Under the pieces are notes generated by a model that did not search any database, was not told where the DNA came from, and was given only the letters and a program-made list of their open reading frames with translations. A DNA stretch of 64,000 nucleotides from Ruditapes philippinarum. Its lineage: Eukaryota. This document shows positions 5,001 through 38,400 of the stretch, piece by piece. The position numbers and the translations under genes are program-made. Within the stretch, counting starts at the first letter, position 1. Each line of letters begins with the position of its first letter. The stretch is taken from assembly GCF_026571515.1 (NCBI RefSeq), contig NW_026856121.1, forward strand, positions 186,001 through 250,000. The letters are read 5' to 3'.

Positions 5001-5977
5001 ACAACATACCATGCTCATATGCAAAGTCGATACCTTCTTTCAGCCTAGGTTTTGTCAGTGATTCCTCGAACCTTCGCAACATAAATTCGTACTCTGAAAC
5101 GAAACATTAGATAGATCTAAACAGTTATCTAATGTTTTAGGTGATATTGAATCTGAATTCCTTAATAAATTGATTTCTGGATCTGATTAATAACGTCTTT
5201 ATTATTAATATGAAAATATGTTTAAATTGTCCAAGAACGTATAAACACATGTTTGAAGAATGAGAATCAAATTTGCCAAATAAACACACACAAAAATCTC
5301 CAAAACATATTTGACATTAGAAAACCAACATATTGAATACGTTTCGACCCCCTACCTTTCATTTCCTCAATTGGATTCGATGTGTTTTTCTCATGTTTTA
5401 GTCGTTTGGCCTTGACACTGCCATCAATTTCTGCGACCATTTTGTTATCGTATTCATGACAAGCTCTGAGGCGTACCATTAGTTCTGCAATTTCTGCATG
5501 AGCTGAATCTTTTATCAGATCCTGGCATCTGTCATATGTTTCTTGGCCAATTTTCGCAGACAAACTGAGTAGAACCACGACGAGGTCTGACATGTCACGG
5601 GTAAATTCATGCTCCTCGTAGACTGCCAAATATCTATGAATCAGATCATTGCGGGAGTAACCAAAGGACTTTATTTGGATGCGCTCATGAAGGGTCAAAT
5701 CTTGCCCGAAAAGATCTAGAAGAATTTCCGACAGTAAACCAATGTCCCATGATTCTAAATCCGTATTGACGTGACCTTTTGATGGATAGAGCTTCTTAAA
5801 TTGACTATCATGTTTGAACAATTCACGCATATCGTTTTCCTTTGCTGTTAAGATATCAGACAATGATTTCTTACAGGTGTTTAATTCTCTGTTAATCAGA
5901 CTTCTCAGCACAAATGGGACCCCTTCTCCCAACAACAGCATATACCGCAGGTGATGTTCACCCCCGGAAGATGACAT
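2089..5977 (-). CDS. Five-exon gene (~670 aa): DZIP3-like HEPN domain + TRADD-N-like middle domain + C-terminal NHL/SGL-type beta-propeller
   Basis: Hand-built exons (minus): 5977-5341 (alternative donor 5356), 5093-5010, 4321-3904, 3680-3633, 2914-2089. All are GT-AG and phase-compatible; the total is 2013 nt = 671 codons. The N-terminus has QF..LYP...WDIGLL..IL...RNDLIH (HEPN Rx4H at 5636-5653). The last exon has repeated propeller blades (INGICALPNGDLLFID, PYDVC, SRGISLS, RPTALWCD). A splice acceptor at 5995 precedes the ATG; a likely 5'UTR exon donor is at ~9550. Confidence 0.8.
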
Positions 5978-31355: not shown

Positions 31356-32371
31356 GACTGCAAAACCAAAGAAGAACTAGTGTATAATAATTTGTAATAG
31401 CTAAATAACAGTAAAAGATAAATAACAACTGTTTATTCTACAAATTTCGCGTACACTGTTAGTACGCATTTTTAAACCAGCTGAAATGTTATATGCTCTA
31501 ATTAATAACATTTCATTTAAAAAACAAATCTTTACAAAATCTGTATAAAACAGGTATTTTGAGTGTGTCCACAAGACGAATTTAGCCATTAACCGGAACA
31601 GTTGAGAATTCATCTGTGACAACTTCTATGGTATTGACTGTATATAAAGAACTACGAGATAAGATTTTTTATCATAAGTGGCACTGGCCTAAATTAAATT
31701 CAATATGAAAGTAATGTAGTTGAACTTAAGAAATAAAGTAATTGTTTACAGATCCTGTAACACATTTTTTTTATGATTTTATATCATAAATATGATGCTC
31801 AATTTAAGATTAAACAATTTTGTAAGTTCCAAAAAGCATCATTTATCAAATTTTTCAATAAGAAATGAATGCATATATTTCAATAATTGCATATAATATG
31901 TACAAATATTTGCAGTACATATTTAACTTATTCTTCGATGTTTGAAAATTGTTTATATGCATTATTATATACATATATATAATTTCACTCAAGTGTGGTA
32001 TACAACCTCAATTACAACATACAGAATCTTTAAGAGAACGAGATCTGTCAATGATCTTATTGTGAATTGGTTTACAATAAGTACTTTTTTCGATACGTAT
32101 TTTTAATGTCGAAAAAAGTACAACAATAGAAATGTATCATTTGGCTAGTCTTAAAATTATACTTGAAGAAAAAAAATGATTAAGTTCTAAGTGATTTAGT
32201 ATGAACATTTATATAATGTATTATACAATTTGTTCTAGAACAATTTATTATCTGCTATAATACTCATAATATATGTAGTATTGAATCATGTATCTCACAC
32301 TTGCCAACACCATCCAGCTATAATTTTTTTATGGTTGGTTGTTATATGTAATACTAAAAACTGTCAACGTA

Positions 32372-35300
32372 GGCGATACCGGGGCATAACGTTACATTTT
32401 ACTTATTTTTTATATTTAATGATTAAATATAATTGTGTGTATCATATAAACTATGTTTTAAAAATAAACAACATCCCTTTAATCAATCAGTGAATTTTAT
32501 TTGAACAATGCTATAAGTATTTGTAAATGAGGTTAAATGAAACATTATGAGTAACCGTAACACTTTGCCCCGATATTTGGGGCAAAGTAATACATAACAC
32601 GGGATAATATGATACGCTTACATATCAGTTCATTACTATGTTCGACTAGGCTCAACTAAATAACAATGTGTGTAAATATAATTGCAACAAGACGAAACCA
32701 TATAAATAAATGTCAGTCACAGCCTCTATGGTCAAAACACTAAGTACTGTGACAATCACTGTAATCTGAGTCACAGTTAAGACATATGAAAACATGGCCC
32801 CTCAAGACAGCAGCACATTCTTCTTGCGTCCATTCTTTACATTTAACACATCGGATCCATTTCTCTCCGGGTCGACTGTTGGAATATGGTTCTACGCAAA
32901 TCAGACAAAACCACTCGTCGTTCTCGGAAGAATCAGACTCTATCACTTTCTTTTTCTTATTAACTGATTTTCTTTTTTGATTTGTTATCTGTTTTGGTTT
33001 ATCATTTTCTGTTCTTTGATTTAAAAGTTTTTTATTCTTTTTCTGTTCGCGTATTCTGAAAATTTCTTCAATGGCATTTTTTTGAGTGTCTGTTAATATT
33101 GCTGTATTACGTTTCCTACGTCCAGCAGTGCCTTTTCTTGGAGCTCCTTTTGGGTGAGGTCTTATATGTTCTGGAGAGAACTGATGAGATTCATATCCTT
33201 GGCTTGATTGTATCCTTGGTGCACTACTTGGTGTATTGTTGTTATTTTCTTGACATATCCCAACGCAGTTATAATGGGCACTTCCATTTTGGCTAGTCTT
33301 GGCTATATGAATGCCACCATTAAATATAACCCCTTCTCTGCCAGGTGTATGTGCAAAAAAATCTGTACCTCGGTTTGCACACAAAAGTTTATAATAGTAG
33401 AAACACCAAAGCTATTGCATAGGGCTGCAAGAACTAAATCGATGGAGTCATTGTTAAACTCTTTTTTCGTGATGTAATTTTCAATATCAGAAACGATATC
33501 GCGGCCACCAGCAAATTCTGTGTAATAACCTCTGTTGACAATAATTTCATTTTAAAGTTTGAAACAAATTTCATCATGGCTTATATTTGCAATATTTTCC
33601 TCAGATAACGCTCTTCACACTGAATGCAAAAGACAGTGCCCATCTGCAGGTACATGTTGTAACTCTCTACCCATAACCTGTCTTGAAAACTTGCCAAGTA
33701 TCTTTTAAAGGGACCAAATACCGACCTATCCAAGGGTTGTAACTTATGAGAGCAATGAGGCGGACATGATAACATTACAATACCATTTTCGCGTGCATAA
33801 TTAGGAATATCGATATGAAGATGTGAGTCGTGGTTGTCAAGAAGAAGGAGAACTTTCTTCTCCTTTGTTACTTTGTGTGATGAGCGAAATGTTTCAGAAA
33901 TTTCAAGAAATTGTCATGAGTCATCCAACCTGAAGAATGCGCTGCACCTATGCAACCGGCTGGTCCATCACGGATAAAATGGTCCTGGAATTTAACACGA
34001 GGGAAATGAGCGTTAGAGGAATTGCATTGCCGCTAGCACTGACAGCTGCACACATCGTTACAAGCTCCCCACGTTCAGTAGACGTAATAGAACCAATTTG
34101 CTAAACACCTTTAGTCGCTACCATACTTCGTGGCTTTTGTACTGTGGTAACCCCTGTTTCATCAAAATTCCATACATCACTAGCTTGAAACTTTTCTCTA
34201 TCCATAGCAGCTGCAAGCTTATCAAAAAAAGAGATTTACATTAGCTCTGTTAAAACTTGTCGCCCGCGATAAACTTGTGGCTTCATGGGTTCTTATTGAT
34301 AGATCTTTGTTCCGCTTCATAAAACCAGAGAACCAGTCGGGTCCAGCACTTTTATCCCTTTTCCAAGACTCAGGCATACCAATACCAAACGCATCAGCAC
34401 ATTCGAACGCTAAAATTCGTACCTCCTTTGGACTTAACCCAAAATATACATTGGCTGCCGTCTTCAGATAGTTTTTCAGTATGTTTTCTTGGATGTCAGA
34501 GAAGACTGGCTTAAAAGATCGTTCTGAGAAGCTCTCAACATTATCTGTTCCAAGTTCTTTAGCTTTTTTAATGTATCTACACAGTGTCATAGGGTTCATC
34601 TTTATCTCATTGGCAACAGACCGGATACTTCGACCGCAAATGACTACATCACTAATTCCTCTTTTAATAACATCTGCGGAAACCTTACATAGCGGTGTTG
34701 ATCTCTTGTAGTTTCGTACCATTCTGAATGAAAAAAACAACATAAATTTGATATTGAATAAATAAATAAATATAGATACGTTTATATCCTATTTTATTAT
34801 TTACATGTTTGTTCTGAGTTTTTTATGTTTATTGTTGTTGTTTTTTTCCCCTGAGGATTAGCAATATATCTTGTAAGAAATCTATAGGTTTTTTATATAA
34901 ATCTATATTAAAGTAGAGATTGTAAAAAAAAACAACACTCATTTAGATTCCCTTGCTACTGTGAAAGAAATATTTATAATATTTTTCTTGTTTGATAAAA
35001 GCATAGGGGCTTAGTGTTACACTGTAGCAGATTGCCCCTACATACAGTAACACATTGCCCCAACGATATCACCGAGACTAGGCAGGTTTTTGGATAAAAT
35101 ACGAGGTAATCAGAATATCAGTTTATTGTACAACTTATTGACAAATGTATAATGTATAATTTTATACATGGGCTATATCATCACAAACGGTATAATTGAA
35201 AAAAAAATACATGTATATTCAAAAAATATTCAAAAGTTGCCTACGAAGAAGAAGTGTTGATTTGCGGCTTAATCTTTATTTTAAGTCCCGCTTCAGCTTA

Positions 35301-35419
35301 GGTAGTATGAAAAAATATGAATTTGATTGGCGTCCAAACTACAATTGTTACGACGTCATATGTGACGTTATAAGTTTTGTATCGCTTTACTCCATGCAAT
35401 ATTACGTCCCGGTCTCCCC
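32372..35419 (-). mobile_element. Decayed pogo-superfamily (DD35D, Fot-like/Passer spacing) DNA transposon with TIRs and TA flanks
   Basis: TIRs GGCGATACCGGGGCATAACGTTACA and GGGGAGACCGGGACGTAATATTGCA (18/25 match), each flanked by TA; internal GTAACAC(T/A)TTGCCCC repeats near both ends. Confidence 0.85.
32740..34722 (-). pseudogene. Disrupted transposase: HTH(psq/CENP-B)-DDE_1-OTU-like-PHD finger
   Basis: Start MVRNYKR at 34722; AGPDWFSGFMKRN; WNFDETG; LLLDNHDSH...35 aa...LQPLD; OTU-like segment 33674-33255; SPEHIRPHPK..PRK...AILTDT; C-terminal CLIC...WIRCVKC...C...CLNC. Several stops and frameshifts. Confidence 0.85.
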
Positions 35420-38400
35420 TACTTATTTGTTGTATAACAGACTTTAAATTTACAGGGAAGAACTGAATACATGTAAAAAGCATTGGTCATTTGAAAATTT
35501 AAATCTGAAATCTCGGAATCTGATTGATTGGCCATTAAAAAGTTAGCAAAAAAGCACAAAAAAAAACACAAAAAACCAGATTATTCTGACATAGTATACG
35601 CGTCTAATTTTTAATTGATCTAAAGGAATTCTGGAACGAACTATTTACATTCATAAGTTCTTTATACTATCAACCATGCCTTCTCCTACACCTTTTAAAC
35701 TTGCATCCTGCTACATATTATTTTACGCTGCTTTAATGAGTTATAAATTTTGTCAAACATTAACCAAACCACTACTTATAACCCATAAACCTGTTTATGC
35801 AACTTTTCGGTCCTTTTCGTTATTTCCAAAGGTTTACAAATCTATTGATTAGGATTTTTCGTATCAACAAAACGTTATATTTATAAAATTATTTCTATTG
35901 AAATGCCGATTTGACTAAACAACAATTACTTAAACATTTTCGTTGAGCTAAACCCACATTCATAATAATAGAAATAAAGAATAACGTGACTGTAAAAACT
36001 GAGACAAGAAAAGTGAGTACAAAATAAATTGTTTTGTTTGCAGTTGATATTTACTTCTTCTTTACTTTTAAAGATTTACTACAGACTTTCCTTTTTGTTT
36101 TTATATTTAAAAAAACTTCGTATGTGCCAACATATACATATGATTTTTATATTTCAAAAATTAATATTTCAAAAATTTAATCTTATATTAAAATAATAAG
36201 GTCAATATCATAATCCTTATGATTCTATTTCCATGTTTCCTAAGATACGATATGCAAATAAACCAGTTTTAGTTCGGCCGAGTATCTTTTTAAAATATAC
36301 TTCTTGTTTTATTTTAGACAGATCTATATTTTATCTATAAAATTTTCCAAGTCAATCATCATAATAATAAAAATATATAGTCAGTTCAGCTCAACTTGAC
36401 CATGAAAAATAAATAAGCATAATGTCAATTTAACTTTGAATATTCAGATCAGGACACACCAATTACACAAATTCAACAGTGTCAGTTAACAAGAATACGG
36501 GAAAGACGTCACAGTACTTAACGTTTATCAGAAAATATTTAAATATAAAGATCAAACATGAATGAGATTTTTATTCTATTTATTAAGTGAACTTTTCCCA
36601 AAACTGTTTGTCAAAGAATTATTTCAAATGATTAAATTAAAATGTCATAAAACTATTTCCAGTGTCTGCCAATTGGGGTGATTTCACAGCGGTATCACTG
36701 TAATCCCAAATAAAATGCAAGTTTGGAAGTATATATGTGTCAAAATCTTCAAATTAAGTTATGAATATCTTCCAAAAGCTAACTTTCTATAAAATTCAAG
36801 CTATATGAACAGTGAATATACCAGAATATTGGTTTATACCATACTTCTATTGACTCTGTGAAAACAATTAAAGGGAAATACTAGTCAAATATGACAATTT
36901 TATAATATAGTTTTCTTACAATGAGTATACTCATTATTCACAAATTTTTTATTGGCAGATGCTTTTCGATTTAGTGTCACAGTTTTAAGAAAAGTATCAT
37001 CAACATGCTTGATATCTTGCTTTCGCATGCAGTCACGGAAAATGAAAATACCGTGATATCATAGAACCCGTGATATCATAGGAACTGAGTATAACTGTTA
37101 ATTAACACAAAAATTATTTTTTTTTTGTAAAAATCAAACAGAGAGCACCAAACATGGGGAACAATTCCCTTACGTAATATGTGAGCAACAACTAAATGTT
37201 CATAGATCATTGAACAATTTAAAGATTGTCACTGATTTTTATGGGGCTTTAAATCATAACTATGATGCTAAAATGAAGATTTATCAGTATTGTAAGTTTC
37301 AAAAAGCATTATTTGTAAAGATATAACCGAATTTACATTTCATTTAATTAAAAGGAGGTTATTAGAAATTTATTTTCTAAAAAAGGGCCAAAAATTTTCA
37401 ATTACAAATGAATGCATATATTTTAATGATTACTAATAATGCGTCTAAACATTTGCAGTATATATTTAACACATTCTTGGATGTTTGGAAATTGTTTACG
37501 AAGAATGAATATATACGTATATAAAATTTCACTTAAGTGTTGTTACACGGTATCTTAAATATATTCACGCAAGTTAAAGTCATATATGCAAAAAGTATCT
37601 CAGGACACAGCAGTAAATTCTGATGAAACTGTTATTGTTGTATGAGTTATGTTTGATTTACATTTTCTATAAATCGTACGTGTAATTATGTTACTGTGTA
37701 TGTCTGGATATTGGTCATTTGAAGACAGCTTTGTAAACACGATATTGAATAAATAAGTTGTTATCATTATTACCATTTTATCATCATTATTATCATCATC
37801 TTCATAATTATCATTATTATTATTTTCAAATGTTTTCAAAAGAAAAAAAAATCTCTATTTGTAATCCTTTTCTCGCTTATATTGCTTATAAAAGACAAAA
37901 TATTTCACAGCAATGATTTAAAGTAGTCTATTCTTATTAGATAATGGAAGAAGCAATATCTTTGAGGCCCCTAAGCACCGGTTTCAGAGAAGAATTCGAT
38001 CTTAAACACTGTCATAAGTATTGAGATTATTCATGTATGATATTGATTTATATTTATCAGTCACACTGCAACACTTTTCAATACACGAATACAAGTAAAA
38101 TGGTTTCCTGCGGGGAACATTTTTAATGATATAAAGATATTTCATTTAACTATTTTCAACATTGTTTTTGGGAGAGGGGAATAAAAAAAAAGTTTGTATC
38201 AGGAATATAGTTGACAATAATCGATCAATATAGAAGAAGGTCTTTGGAAACTCGTGACCGTTGATGACCGGAGAAGGTCGAACATCAAACAATTATTTCT
38301 TTTTAAGAAAATGATTAAATAGGCCTACCATTTTATGAACAATTCCAAGCAAAAAAAAATAAAGTAAACACACAAGTTTACGCAGAAAACATCTCTATTT

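What the first reader, a model, noticed from the sequence alone, without database searches (positions are those of the whole stretch)
33255..33674. Hidden OTU-like cysteine protease domain inside a pogo-type transposase (DDE-OTU-PHD)
Seen: between the DD35D catalytic domain and the SPE.IRP.PK/PHD C-terminus, a minus-strand frame missing from the ORF track reads MGRELQHVPADGHCLLHSV*RALSEENIANISHDEICFKL*NEIIVNRGYYTEFAGGRDIVSDIENYITKKEFNNDSIDLVLAALCNSFGVSTII. After one frameshift it continues ...AHTPGREGV...IHIAKTSQNGSAHYNCV, in frame with the PHD-bearing tail. Established: VPxDGxC and HY are the Cys and His boxes of OTU deubiquitinases; OTU cargo is known from Helentrons, some non-LTR elements and Dada transposons. 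I do not know it as a standard pogo feature. Inference: the ancestral element encoded one transposase fused to a deubiquitinase and a chromatin-reader PHD finger, possibly to counter ubiquitin-based silencing or turnover. The out-of-frame DDE/OTU junction at ~33680 suggests a later deletion.
Basis: partly seen in the sequence, partly recalled or inferred. Interest (0 to 1): 0.8.

Follow-up and report, generated by a model that had tools for sequence, protein, structure and literature searches.

The report
Dead pogo transposon with OTU domain
This is a decayed copy of a cut-and-paste (pogo-type) transposon whose transposase carries a built-in ubiquitin-protease (OTU) domain and a histone-reader-like PHD finger, and intact relatives show that the three-part fusion is real.

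Summary

It lies in a 3,048-bp element (32372-35419) with ~28-nt inverted ends and TA duplications.

Three sibling copies in the same genome carry the same segment. They also hold about 350-364 bp that the window copy lost at ~33678. One sibling keeps transposase and OTU in a single 672-aa frame.

A sister family has an intact 707-aa HTH-DDE_1-OTU-PHD ORF. It passes Pfam's OTU cut-off, and RNA reads of its family cover it thinly.

The domain is a true OTU fold:
- AlphaFold pLDDT is 94.
- Z is 15.6-15.9 to Otu2, OTUD3 and OTUD1.
- Cys and His are conserved in 53 of 54 and 56 of 58 relatives.

Among 122 close pogo transposases, 24 carry the OTU and 117 share the PHD tail. One origin of the OTU is not rejected (AU p 0.70).

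Such proteins already sit in databases, auto-named "OTU domain-containing protein". I found no paper describing them. OTU-bearing transposases are known from Ginger1 and Helentrons.

Verdict: a real feature and a new variant of a known kind. Enzyme activity and role are untested.

The parts
35420..35421 (-). TA target-site duplication, 5' side of the element
   Evidence: TA directly precedes the terminal GGGGAGACC in the window copy and in siblings L031 and L032.
35392..35419 (-). 5' terminal inverted repeat (~28 nt, GGGGAGACCGGGAC...)
   Evidence: homology to the sibling copies begins here. It is the inverted match of the 3' end.
34225..34722 (-). N-terminal DNA-binding region of the transposase (166 codons, still open)
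   Evidence: 98% identical to residues 1-166 of the sibling ORF. [quoted passage not shown]
33680..34229 (-). DDE_1 catalytic core remnant, DD35D (second D in 33821-33847, third D in 33728-33739), broken by frameshifts and stops
   Evidence: frames run 3, 2, 1, with a stop in the 34229-34005 piece. One search gives the motifs and the 35-residue spacing. DDE_1 scores E 4.6e-20 in the sibling ORF.
33678..33681 (-). Junction of an internal deletion of about 350-364 bp (end of the DDE_1 domain plus linker)
   Evidence: three siblings carry the extra DNA, and 4 nt are shared by both flanks; sibling residues 349-462 are missing.
33255..33674 (-). OTU-like cysteine protease domain remnant (Cys box 33633-33653, His box 33268-33279), with two stops and one frameshift
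   Evidence: The OTU identity comes from siblings and relatives.
33085..33177 (-). Conserved SPE.IRPHPK...AILTDT motif followed by a basic stretch (likely nuclear localisation; function unknown)
   Evidence: One search gives the coordinates. The tail matches in 117 of 122 relatives and the SPE-type regex in 72 of 122.
32773..32907 (-). PHD-type C4HC3 zinc finger; in this copy the invariant His ligand is replaced by Gln (within 32815-32832)
   Evidence: One search gives the coordinates. In one search, C23, C26, W39, C42, C45, W48, H50, C53, C64 and C67 are invariant in 61 of 61 sequences.
32372..32399 (-). 3' terminal inverted repeat
32370..32371 (-). TA target-site duplication, 3' side

Best explanation
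Window 32372-35419 (minus strand) is a dead, internally deleted copy of a pogo-superfamily DNA transposon. The element has DD35D spacing, ~28-nt inverted ends and a TA duplication.

In intact family members a single ORF encodes, in this order:
- a helix-turn-helix DNA-binding region;
- the DDE_1 catalytic core;
- a variable linker;
- a genuine OTU-fold cysteine protease domain;
- a conserved SPE.IRPHPK/basic motif;
- a C-terminal PHD zinc finger.

The OTU sits in the variable linker of a wider pogo clade that has the PHD tail but no OTU. It was probably gained once.

Shown here: the architecture, the fold, the conserved catalytic Cys/His, the family-wide presence, and the decay of the window copy.

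Inferred (about 55% likely): in intact elements the OTU is an active deubiquitinase working in cis with the transposase. It would either remove ubiquitin from the transposase itself to slow its turnover, or remove it from chromatin and repair factors at the excision or integration site. The PHD finger would tether the complex to H3K4-methylated chromatin.

Family feature:
- Siblings C9140, C14460 and C688 all carry the OTU.
- L031 has a 672-aa ORF with DDE_1 and OTU in one frame.

Intact fusion:
- The L042 707-aa ORF scores DDE_1 69.2 bits, OTU 29.4 bits (cut-off 23.3) and HTH_Tnp_Tc5 22.7 (cut-off 22.2).
- P0003 (782 aa) has the same order.
- 9 of 10 long hits have DDE_1 upstream of the OTU stretch.

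OTU identity:
- A family profile finds OTUD3 at E 1.8e-5, and 32 of 34 PDB hits are OTU proteins.
- The AF2 model has pLDDT 94.2 and pTM 0.89.
- Foldseek's top matches are all OTU domains, with probability 1.00.
- VIA-align gives Z 15.9, 15.7 and 15.6 to Otu2, OTUD3 and OTUD1, with rmsd 2.6-2.8 over 135-138 residues.
- Cys is kept in 53 of 54 non-gap rows and His in 56 of 58. Two residues after the His, 42 of 58 rows have Asp or Asn.

PHD identity:
- The ligands are invariant in 61 of 61 sequences.
- The best fold matches are H3K4me-binding PHD fingers: AL3, BPTF, MLL1 and TAF3.
- Sequence matches are EBS at 1.6e-5 and BPTF at 4.5e-4.

Clade structure:
- 24 of 122 relatives have the OTU and 117 have the tail.
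- All 24 lie in one 30-row subtree.
- The tree that holds them together is not rejected (p-AU 0.70).

Mobility and RNA:
- Sister-family copies are 95-98% alike, each with TA duplications.
- Empty-site joints were seen in 14, 13 and 2 reads. RNA reads cover the ORF at about 1-15x from roughly 4-5% of two runs.
Against: - The window's own pieces give no Pfam OTU hit (0 of 2).
- In the window's own family the Pfam OTU score stays below the cut-off in 5 of 5 proteins (13.6-21.4 bits against 23.3).
- Of 21 relatives scanned pass the cut-off, 6 hit below it, and 10 show no OTU at E<=0.01.
- No enzymatic activity, substrate or effect on transposition has been measured for any member.
- The RNA coverage is thin and lies on both strands. 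Most reads are 95-99% alike rather than 99% or more, so they may come from other copies, from read-through or from DNA carry-over.
- Six OTU-less proteins sit inside the OTU subtree. Some lineages therefore do without the OTU, or lost it.
- Assignment to the Passer family rests only on DD35D, short TIRs and TA. Fot-like elements share DD35D (PMC7386202, passages read).
Confidence: 0.85

Rival explanations
1. The OTU-like segment is a one-off capture or nested insertion in this single copy, or a chance reading, and not part of the transposon family.
For: The window's own pieces do not hit OTU in Pfam. The junction with the DDE part is out of frame.
Against: - Three sibling copies, a sister family and further lineages in the same genome carry it in the same position.
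- Intact single ORFs exist.
- Ten of 14 database representatives of 500 aa or more have transposase followed by OTU.
- The out-of-frame junction is explained by a deletion of about 350-364 bp.
Confidence: 0.02
2. The OTU domain is a self-processing protease, as in some RNA-virus polyproteins. It would cut the fusion protein into a separate transposase and a PHD-bearing piece, and would not act on ubiquitin.
For: The best single-sequence PDB match is a viral OTU domain (nairovirus L protein, E 5e-4). From my own knowledge, OTU-like proteases of some viruses do process polyproteins.
Against: - No conserved Gly-Gly site was found. GG occurs in the linker before the OTU in 1 of 24 OTU-bearing proteins, and after it in 2 of 24.
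- The linkers are variable and of low complexity.
- Profile and structure comparisons put it closest to the cellular deubiquitinases OTUD3, OTUD1, Otu2 and OTUD5.
Confidence: 0.08
3. The OTU domain is kept as a non-catalytic ubiquitin-binding or scaffolding module, or is a neutral passenger. Protease activity would be irrelevant to transposition.
For: - Six OTU-less proteins lie inside the OTU subtree.
- The residue two after the His is variable: D 27, N 15, S 8, E 5 of 58 non-gap rows.
- No activity data exist.
Against: The catalytic Cys and His, the Gly-Asp-Gly-x-Cys box and several core residues are nearly invariant across relatives that are only 23-63% identical. That is the pattern of selection on catalysis. 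The domain persists across at least molluscs and a sea spider.
Confidence: 0.12
4. The locus is a domesticated host gene (a pogo-derived OTU protein) and not a transposon copy.
For: Pogo transposases are often domesticated (PMC7386202, passages read). Database relatives carry gene-like automatic names.
Against: - The window copy has TIRs and TA duplications and is riddled with stops and frameshifts.
- Siblings are dispersed on other contigs at 88-92% identity.
- The sister family has near-identical copies with their own TA duplications, and an empty-site read signature.
Confidence: 0.02

Closest known systems
Ginger1 DNA transposons (Bao, Kapitonov & Jurka 2010, PMC2836005; abstract and passages read)
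   Same: A DDE-type cut-and-paste transposase is fused in one protein to an OTU (or Ulp1) cysteine protease, and one family also has a PHD finger. They occur in invertebrates, including a mollusc (Aplysia). That paper proposed that the ubiquitin pathway takes part in transposition.
   Different: - Ginger1 uses a Gypsy-integrase-like core with YPYY, H2C2 and GPY/F motifs. Here the core is pogo DDE_1 with DD35D and HTH_Tnp_Tc5/psq, and no integrase family appeared in the Pfam scans.
- Ginger1's OTU is listed as a C-terminal domain. Here it sits between the catalytic core and a conserved PHD tail.
- The TIRs here are ~28 nt. Ginger1's are listed as 44-270 nt.
Passer family of the pogo superfamily (Gao et al. 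2020, PMC7386202; Wang et al. 2023, PMC9976928; passages read)
   Same: DD35D spacing, TIRs under 30 bp, TA duplication, an HTH_Tnp_Tc5-type DNA-binding motif, a single ORF, and a wide spread in invertebrates.
   Different: - Described Passer transposases are 400-500 aa with DNA-binding domain, NLS and catalytic domain only. Here intact proteins are about 700-800 aa with an added OTU and PHD.
- Neither pogo survey mentions protease, PHD or ubiquitin (0 occurrences each).
- I did not place the sequences in a tree with named Passer references.
Helentron rolling-circle transposons with OTU domains (PMC9741609, PMC6431247; passages read)
   Same: A transposon-encoded OTU-like cysteine protease fused to the transposition protein, present in molluscs, with untested activity.
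   Different: - Helentrons use a Rep/helicase protein and rolling-circle transposition. They have no DDE core, no TIRs and no TA duplication.
- No Rep or helicase family was found here.
Cellular OTUD-type deubiquitinases (OTUD3, OTUD1, OTUD5, yeast Otu2)
   Same: Closest solved structures: Z 13.7-15.9, rmsd 2.5-2.8 A over 134-138 residues. The order Cys box then His box is the same, and the profile match to OTUD3 is E 1.8e-5.
   Different: Sequence identity is only 14-18%. Here the domain is embedded in a transposase. Linkage specificity and activity are unknown.

Membership tests
OTU cysteine proteases (Pfam PF02338) | N-terminal Cys box (Asp-Gly-x-Cys) carrying the catalytic Cys | tested here: met
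   VPADGHC lies at window 33633-33653. In alignment A1, D19 is kept in 50, G20 in 54 and C22 in 53 of 54 non-gap rows.
OTU cysteine proteases (Pfam PF02338) | C-terminal His box with the catalytic His, followed two residues later by Asp or Asn | tested here: met
   AHYN lies at window 33268-33279. His is kept in 56 of 58 rows and the next residue is Tyr in 54 of 58. Two residues after the His there is D in 27 and N in 15 of 58 rows, with S or E in 13.
OTU cysteine proteases (Pfam PF02338) | Score at or above the Pfam gathering cut-off (23.3 bits) | tested here: inconclusive
   The window's pieces gave 0 of 2 hits. The window's family gave 13.6-21.4 bits in 5 of 5 proteins, all below the cut-off. 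The sister-family ORF L042 scores 29.4 bits, and P0011, P0071, P0027 and P0019 score 30.8, 25.9, 24.7 and 23.6.
OTU cysteine proteases (Pfam PF02338) | OTU variant of the papain-like fold | tested here: met
   The AF2 model has pLDDT 94.2. All listed Foldseek matches are OTU domains. Z is 15.9 to Otu2, 15.7 to OTUD3 and 15.6 to OTUD1, and all 50 listed entries are OTU-type.
OTU cysteine proteases (Pfam PF02338) | Hydrolysis of ubiquitin or ubiquitin-like conjugates | not testable with these tools
   This needs a biochemical assay on an intact family member.
pogo superfamily (IS630-Tc1-mariner group) | DDE_1-type catalytic domain | tested here: met
   PF03184 scores E 4.6e-20 (L031 ORF), 1.9e-20 (P0003) and 4.2e-19 (L042 ORF), against a cut-off of 22 bits.
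pogo superfamily (IS630-Tc1-mariner group) | TA target-site duplication and short terminal inverted repeats | tested here: met
   TA lies on both sides of the window copy and of L031, with ~28-nt TIRs. The same holds in three sister-family copies. The empty-site joint has 2 shared letters.
pogo superfamily (IS630-Tc1-mariner group) | N-terminal HTH DNA-binding motifs (HTH_Tnp_Tc5, psq, CENP-B type) | tested here: met
   HTH_Tnp_Tc5 scores 22.7 bits against a cut-off of 22.2 in L042. HTH_psq is above its cut-off in P0020, P0027, P0071, P0109 and P0056.
Passer family of pogo | DD35D spacing | tested here: met
   35 residues lie between D26 and D62 of the frame 33913-33680. Fot-like elements share this spacing (PMC7386202).
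Passer family of pogo | Placement inside the Passer clade in a tree with named reference transposases | not tested
PHD zinc finger (Pfam PF00628) | Cys4-His-Cys3 ligand pattern | tested here: met
   C23, C26, C42, C45, H50, C53, C64 and C67 are invariant in 61 of 61 sequences. In the window copy itself the His is replaced by Gln.
PHD zinc finger (Pfam PF00628) | PHD fold and sequence similarity to solved PHD fingers | tested here: met
   All listed Foldseek matches are PHD-finger entries, led by AL3 at E 3.7e-4 and BPTF at 1.4e-3, with probability 1.00. phmmer finds EBS at 1.6e-5, BPTF at 4.5e-4 and JARID1A PHD3 at 4.7e-4. The Pfam score stays below the cut-off (15.7-20 bits against 24).
PHD zinc finger (Pfam PF00628) | Binding of methylated histone H3K4 through an aromatic cage | not testable with these tools
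   In the alignment, F22, Y30, W39 and W48 align with BPTF Y10, Y17, Y23 and W32. That these four form BPTF's cage is recalled, not from a call. W39 and W48 are invariant.
Ginger1 transposons | Gypsy-integrase-like core (H2C2 zinc finger, integrase DDE, GPY/F motif) | tested here: not met
   The Pfam scans of L031, P0003 and L042 list DDE_1 and DDE_3 and no integrase family. The resemblance is in architecture only.
Helentrons | Rep/helicase protein | tested here: not met
   No Rep or helicase family appears in the same Pfam scans.

The most novel reading that the evidence does not exclude
A so far undescribed clade of pogo (Passer-like, DD35D) transposons gained an OTU deubiquitinase once, inserted between the catalytic core and an H3K4me-reader-type PHD finger. 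On this reading the DUB is catalytically active and needed for efficient transposition. It would act either by stabilising the transposase or by erasing ubiquitin marks at the break or integration site. The clade would still be mobile in this bivalve genome, which gives a natural system for testing why unrelated transposon classes (Ginger1, Helentron, non-LTR, pogo) keep acquiring OTU domains.
Probability: 0.3. Interest if true: 0.6.

Novelty: new variant of a known kind. Interest (0 to 1): 0.45.

Why it matters
Transposon-borne ubiquitin proteases recur in Ginger1, Helentrons, Mutator (Ulp1) and some retrotransposons. [quoted passage not shown]

Pogo and Passer elements are small, single-ORF, and already work in cell-based transposition assays (PMC9976928). 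An OTU-bearing pogo clade with OTU-less sisters that share the same PHD tail is therefore a clean natural experiment. The domain can be deleted or mutated, and both transposition and integration-site choice can then be measured.

The window copy itself is a dead relic with no function. The value lies in the family it points to, which includes an intact copy in the same genome that RNA reads cover thinly.

Tried and rejected
Steps that led nowhere or gave only weak results:
- Pfam on the window's own pieces gave no OTU hit.
- Pfam on the window's family gave only sub-threshold OTU hits.
- The word-indexed protein search on the OTU region found only 3 proteins. The exhaustive search was needed.
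- I looked for a hidden, divergent OTU in the 97 OTU-less relatives with a family profile. Their matches are to profile positions 157 and beyond, which is the tail only.
- I looked for a conserved Gly-Gly self-cleavage site in the linkers and found none: 1 of 24 and 2 of 24.
- I looked for an intron joint in the sister element. Its first ~39 codons lie about 510 bp upstream of the main ORF, but no internal joint reached the listing threshold.
- Taxon names came back for few clusters. Only Pycnogonum litorale, Patella caerulea and Mytilus edulis are named among OTU-bearing relatives.
- The look-up of sequencing runs returned coded organism names.
- A findings search by sequence was blank.

Readings rejected:
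- A special kinship with nairovirus OTU domains. They were the best single-sequence PDB hit, but the profile and the structure rank cellular OTUD proteins first.

Literature:
- No paper describing a pogo or Tc1-mariner transposase with an OTU domain appeared in seven full-text searches.
- Repbase and Dfam cannot be searched here.
- Supplementary tables of PMC7386202 and PMC9976928 were not opened.
Full report
**Observation**

It reads MGRELQHVPADGHCLLHSV, stop, 20 residues, stop, then NEIIVNRGYY...GVSTII. The reading then continues one frame over inside the 214-aa ORF 32740-33384. That ORF holds AHTPGREGV...SAHYNCV, the SPEHIRPHPK motif, a basic stretch and a Cys-rich finger. Coordinates:

| Feature | Window coordinates |
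|---|---|
| Cys box | 33633-33653 |
| Stops | 33615-33617 and 33552-33554 |
| His box | 33268-33279 |

**The element**

A DNA search of the window's own genome gave 40 matches. Three sibling copies, on contigs C9140, C14460 and C688, align at 88-92% identity from window 35421/35422 down to 32369.

The ends are about 28-nt inverted repeats beginning GGGGAGACCGGG. They are flanked by TA in the window copy and in the siblings. The element is therefore window 32372-35419, 3,048 bp, with TA at 32370-32371 and 35420-35421.

All three siblings carry about 364, 360 and 350 extra bases exactly between window 33681 and 33678. The window copy therefore suffered an internal deletion, with 4 nt of shared sequence at the junction. 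The deletion removed sibling residues 349-462, which are the end of the DDE_1 domain plus the linker.

Against the sibling protein, the window's coding remnant runs through frames 2, 3, 2, 1, then the deletion, then 3 and 2, with several stops. It is a dead copy. Its catalytic motifs are still readable and show DD35D spacing.

**Is the OTU part of the family?**

Yes.
- Sibling L031 (C9140) has a 672-aa ORF that runs from MVRNY through the DDE_1 domain and the linker into the OTU-like domain in one frame.
- Sibling L032 has a 243-aa ORF with the whole OTU-like domain and the SPE motif.
- A protein search of the genome with that domain gave 20 matches on 18 contigs. They include a sister family that is 42-43% identical.
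- In that sister family, L042 (contig C6622) has an intact 707-aa ORF with transposase, OTU, SPE/basic motif and zinc finger.
- Outside this genome, P0003 (782 aa) is an intact protein with the same order.

**Is it an OTU?**

Pfam results:
- On the window's own two pieces there was no OTU hit at E<=1.
- In five proteins of the window's family, OTU is the best non-transposase family but stays below the 23.3-bit cut-off. Scores are 13.6-21.4 bits, E 3.7e-4 to 0.095.
- Of 21 more distant relatives scanned, 5 pass the cut-off: L042 29.4, P0011 30.8, P0071 25.9, P0027 24.7, P0019 23.6.
- A further 6 hit below the cut-off, and 10 show nothing at E<=0.01.

Searches against solved structures by sequence:
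- A single-sequence search found nairovirus L-protein OTU domains at E 5e-4. The alignment runs from the Cys box to the His box.
- An exhaustive search of 1.84 billion representatives found 253 proteins at E<=0.001 and 47 at E<=1e-10.
- A 60-sequence alignment of these (A1) used as a profile found OTUD3 at E 1.8e-5 over the whole domain. 32 of the 34 PDB hits at E<=1 are OTU proteins.

Conservation in A1:
- The Cys is kept in 53 of 54 non-gap rows.
- The His is kept in 56 of 58 rows.
- The following Tyr is kept in 54 of 58 rows.
- The residue two after the His is Asp or Asn in 42 of 58 rows.

Structure:
- AlphaFold2 on A1 gave pLDDT 94.2 and pTM 0.89.
- All listed Foldseek matches are OTU domains, with OTUD3 at 4e-6 and OTUD1 at TM 0.71-0.74.
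- VIA-align gives Z 15.9 to yeast Otu2 (rmsd 2.6, 138 aligned), 15.7 to OTUD3 and 15.6 to OTUD1. All 50 listed entries are OTU-type.

I take the domain to be a genuine OTU-fold protease with its catalytic dyad under selection. Activity was not tested and cannot be tested here.

**The tail**

An alignment of 61 tails (A2) has invariant C23, C26, W39, C42, C45, W48, H50, C53, C64 and C67. That is a Cys4-His-Cys3 pattern.
- The AF2 model has pLDDT 80.1 overall and 86-94 across the finger.
- Its Foldseek matches are PHD fingers, led by H3K4me-binding ones: AL3 at 3.7e-4, then BPTF, MLL1 PHD3 and TAF3, with probability 1.00.
- phmmer finds EBS at 1.6e-5, BPTF at 4.5e-4 and JARID1A PHD3 at 4.7e-4.
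- Pfam PHD stays below the cut-off (15.7-20 bits against 24).
- In the alignment, F22, Y30, W39 and W48 fall on BPTF Y10, Y17, Y23 and W32. I recall these four as BPTF's methyl-lysine cage. That is memory, not a call.
- In the window copy the invariant His is Gln.

**Where the OTU sits in pogo evolution**

A full-length search with P0003 gave 1,495 relatives at E<=1e-10, of which 120 were listed. I added the two ORFs from this genome, making 122 proteins.
- 24 have the OTU.
- 117 match the tail.
- 97 have the tail or PHD but no OTU.
- 1 (P0198) has neither.

The family profile found no hidden OTU in the 97. The six OTU-less proteins nearest the OTU group have low-complexity linkers in its place.

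I built a transposase-only tree of 121 rows, leaving out P0198 for its short match. The method was quick IQ-TREE with LG+G4. All 24 OTU-bearing rows fall in one 30-row subtree (SH-aLRT 93). The label needs 4 changes on that tree, and well-supported branches force only 1. None of 500 shuffles was as low.

The best tree that holds the 24 together has a log-likelihood 14.3 higher than the free search, with p-AU 0.70. One gain followed by some losses is therefore compatible with the data. It is not proven. The tree is unrooted and quick, and one long-branch warning concerns P0020.

Among the 150 listed representatives of the OTU search:
- 19 have the transposase upstream of the OTU.
- 13 have all three parts.
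- 10 of the 14 proteins of 500 aa or more have transposase followed by OTU.
- One of the other four (P0144) is a non-LTR retrotransposon protein with reverse transcriptase.

**Activity of the family**

- Sister-family copies on C6622, C7906 and C7732 are 95-98% alike over about 3.8 kb.
- Each has 27-nt TIRs and its own TA duplication.
- Three RNA-seq runs (raw reads) and one run of uncertain kind, held as contigs, all of the same coded organism, were laid on L047:1400-5500.
- Two RNA runs covered the ORF at about 1-15x with only 4-5% of each run read, on both strands. 818 of 976 and 800 of 950 laid reads were 95-99% alike.
- A third RNA run laid only 40 reads, almost all on the flanks.
- A joint that skips 3,821 letters, with 2 shared letters, was seen in 14, 13 and 2 reads. 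This is the empty site with a single TA.
- The flanks are themselves a high-depth repeat, so those reads may come from paralogous empty copies.
- I read this as transcription of the family at a low level. It is not proof that the intact copy itself is expressed.

**Mechanism**

Shown: one polypeptide with a DNA-binding region, a DD35D nuclease, an OTU fold with a conserved Cys/His, a basic motif and a PHD finger.

Inferred: the OTU removes ubiquitin, or a ubiquitin-like modifier, from the transposase or from chromatin and repair factors at the site of cutting and pasting. The PHD finger would dock on H3K4-methylated nucleosomes. I give this about 55%.

A self-processing role is disfavoured, because a Gly-Gly site occurs in only 1 of 24 and 2 of 24 linkers. 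A non-catalytic role is disfavoured by conservation of the dyad, but is not excluded.

**Comparison with what is known**

- Ginger1 transposases carry a C-terminal OTU or Ulp1 domain, one with a PHD, in Hydra, Aplysia and aphid (PMC2836005, abstract and passages).
- Helentrons carry OTU domains whose activity was never tested (PMC9741609 and PMC6431247, passages).
- Passer pogo elements have DD35D, TIRs under 30 bp, TA duplications and 400-500-aa transposases (PMC9976928 and PMC7386202, passages).
- The two pogo-wide surveys contain no occurrence of protease, PHD or ubiquitin.
- Seven full-text searches gave no paper on a pogo or Tc1-mariner OTU fusion.
- The proteins themselves are in public databases. 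P0205 (Patella caerulea) and P0211 (Mytilus edulis) carry the UniRef name 'OTU domain-containing protein'. P0200 and P0071 have precomputed Pfam PF02338 plus PF03184. P0020 is an 'Uncharacterised protein' of Pycnogonum litorale.
- Repbase, Dfam and the papers' supplements could not be checked.

**Other notes from this scan**

These are AI notes that I did not check. They report OTU domains in Ginger1, Sola, KDZ and Helentron-like elements of the same genome. One follow-up note calls the genome the Manila clam. I did not verify either.

**Verdict**

The window copy is an inert relic. The family is a real pogo-OTU-PHD lineage that is apparently undescribed in print, and I class it as a new variant of the known theme of protease-carrying transposases. 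Interest is moderate, because the function is untested but now directly testable with an intact copy.

Genomic context and sample identity of the database relatives could therefore not be examined.

Noticed in passing
L047:1549-5371 (G000:C6622, minus strand): This is a sister-family pogo-OTU-PHD element of about 3.82 kb with an intact 707-aa ORF. Its first ~39 codons (MVRNY...) lie about 510 bp upstream of the main ORF in another frame, which suggests an intron. RNA depth is near zero across that stretch, but no splice joint was listed.
   Followed up: partly
L047:1400-1548 and 5372-5500: The DNA flanking the sister element has 50-90x RNA-read depth, against 1-15x inside the element, and shows many loose ends. 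The element apparently inserted into another high-copy or highly expressed repeat. The empty-site reads may come from that repeat's other copies.
   Followed up: no
window 35047-35063, 32557-32571 and 32577-32593: Internal copies of a GGGGCAA.GT..TAC motif lie roughly 190-370 bp inside each end. One pair forms a palindrome 7 nt apart (I19 and I25). The motif resembles the inner part of the TIR and may provide extra transposase-binding sites.
   Followed up: no
P0144 (database protein, 1,202 aa): A non-LTR retrotransposon protein (reverse transcriptase plus weak, sub-threshold matches to an AP-type endonuclease) has an N-terminal stretch homologous to the pogo OTU at E 5e-6. Related OTU modules therefore sit in different transposon classes.
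   Followed up: partly
P0215 and P0257 (database proteins; P0257 named from Amphibalanus amphitrite): These OTU-less relatives lie inside the OTU-bearing subtree. In place of the OTU they have a long proline-rich tandem repeat (...PSSAPQCAPG...). P0257 is auto-named 'SH3 domain-containing protein C23A1.17-like', which looks like a misnomer for a pogo transposase.
   Followed up: no
window 33085-33177 and the equivalent region of relatives: A conserved motif of unknown function (S/T-P-E-x-I-R-P-x-P-K-A ... A-I-L-T-D-T-P-E-K) lies between the linker or OTU and the PHD finger. An SPE-type regex hits 72 of 122 relatives, and 117 match the tail as a whole.
   Followed up: no
G000 contigs C8756, C3914, C13369, C6405, C7883, C15660, C5931: There are further OTU matches, 34-47% identical to the query, most of them broken. 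For C8756, C3914, C7883, C13369 and C15660, one search also lists transposase-part DNA matches within about 2 kb on the same contig. The genome seems to hold several older pogo-OTU lineages.
   Followed up: no
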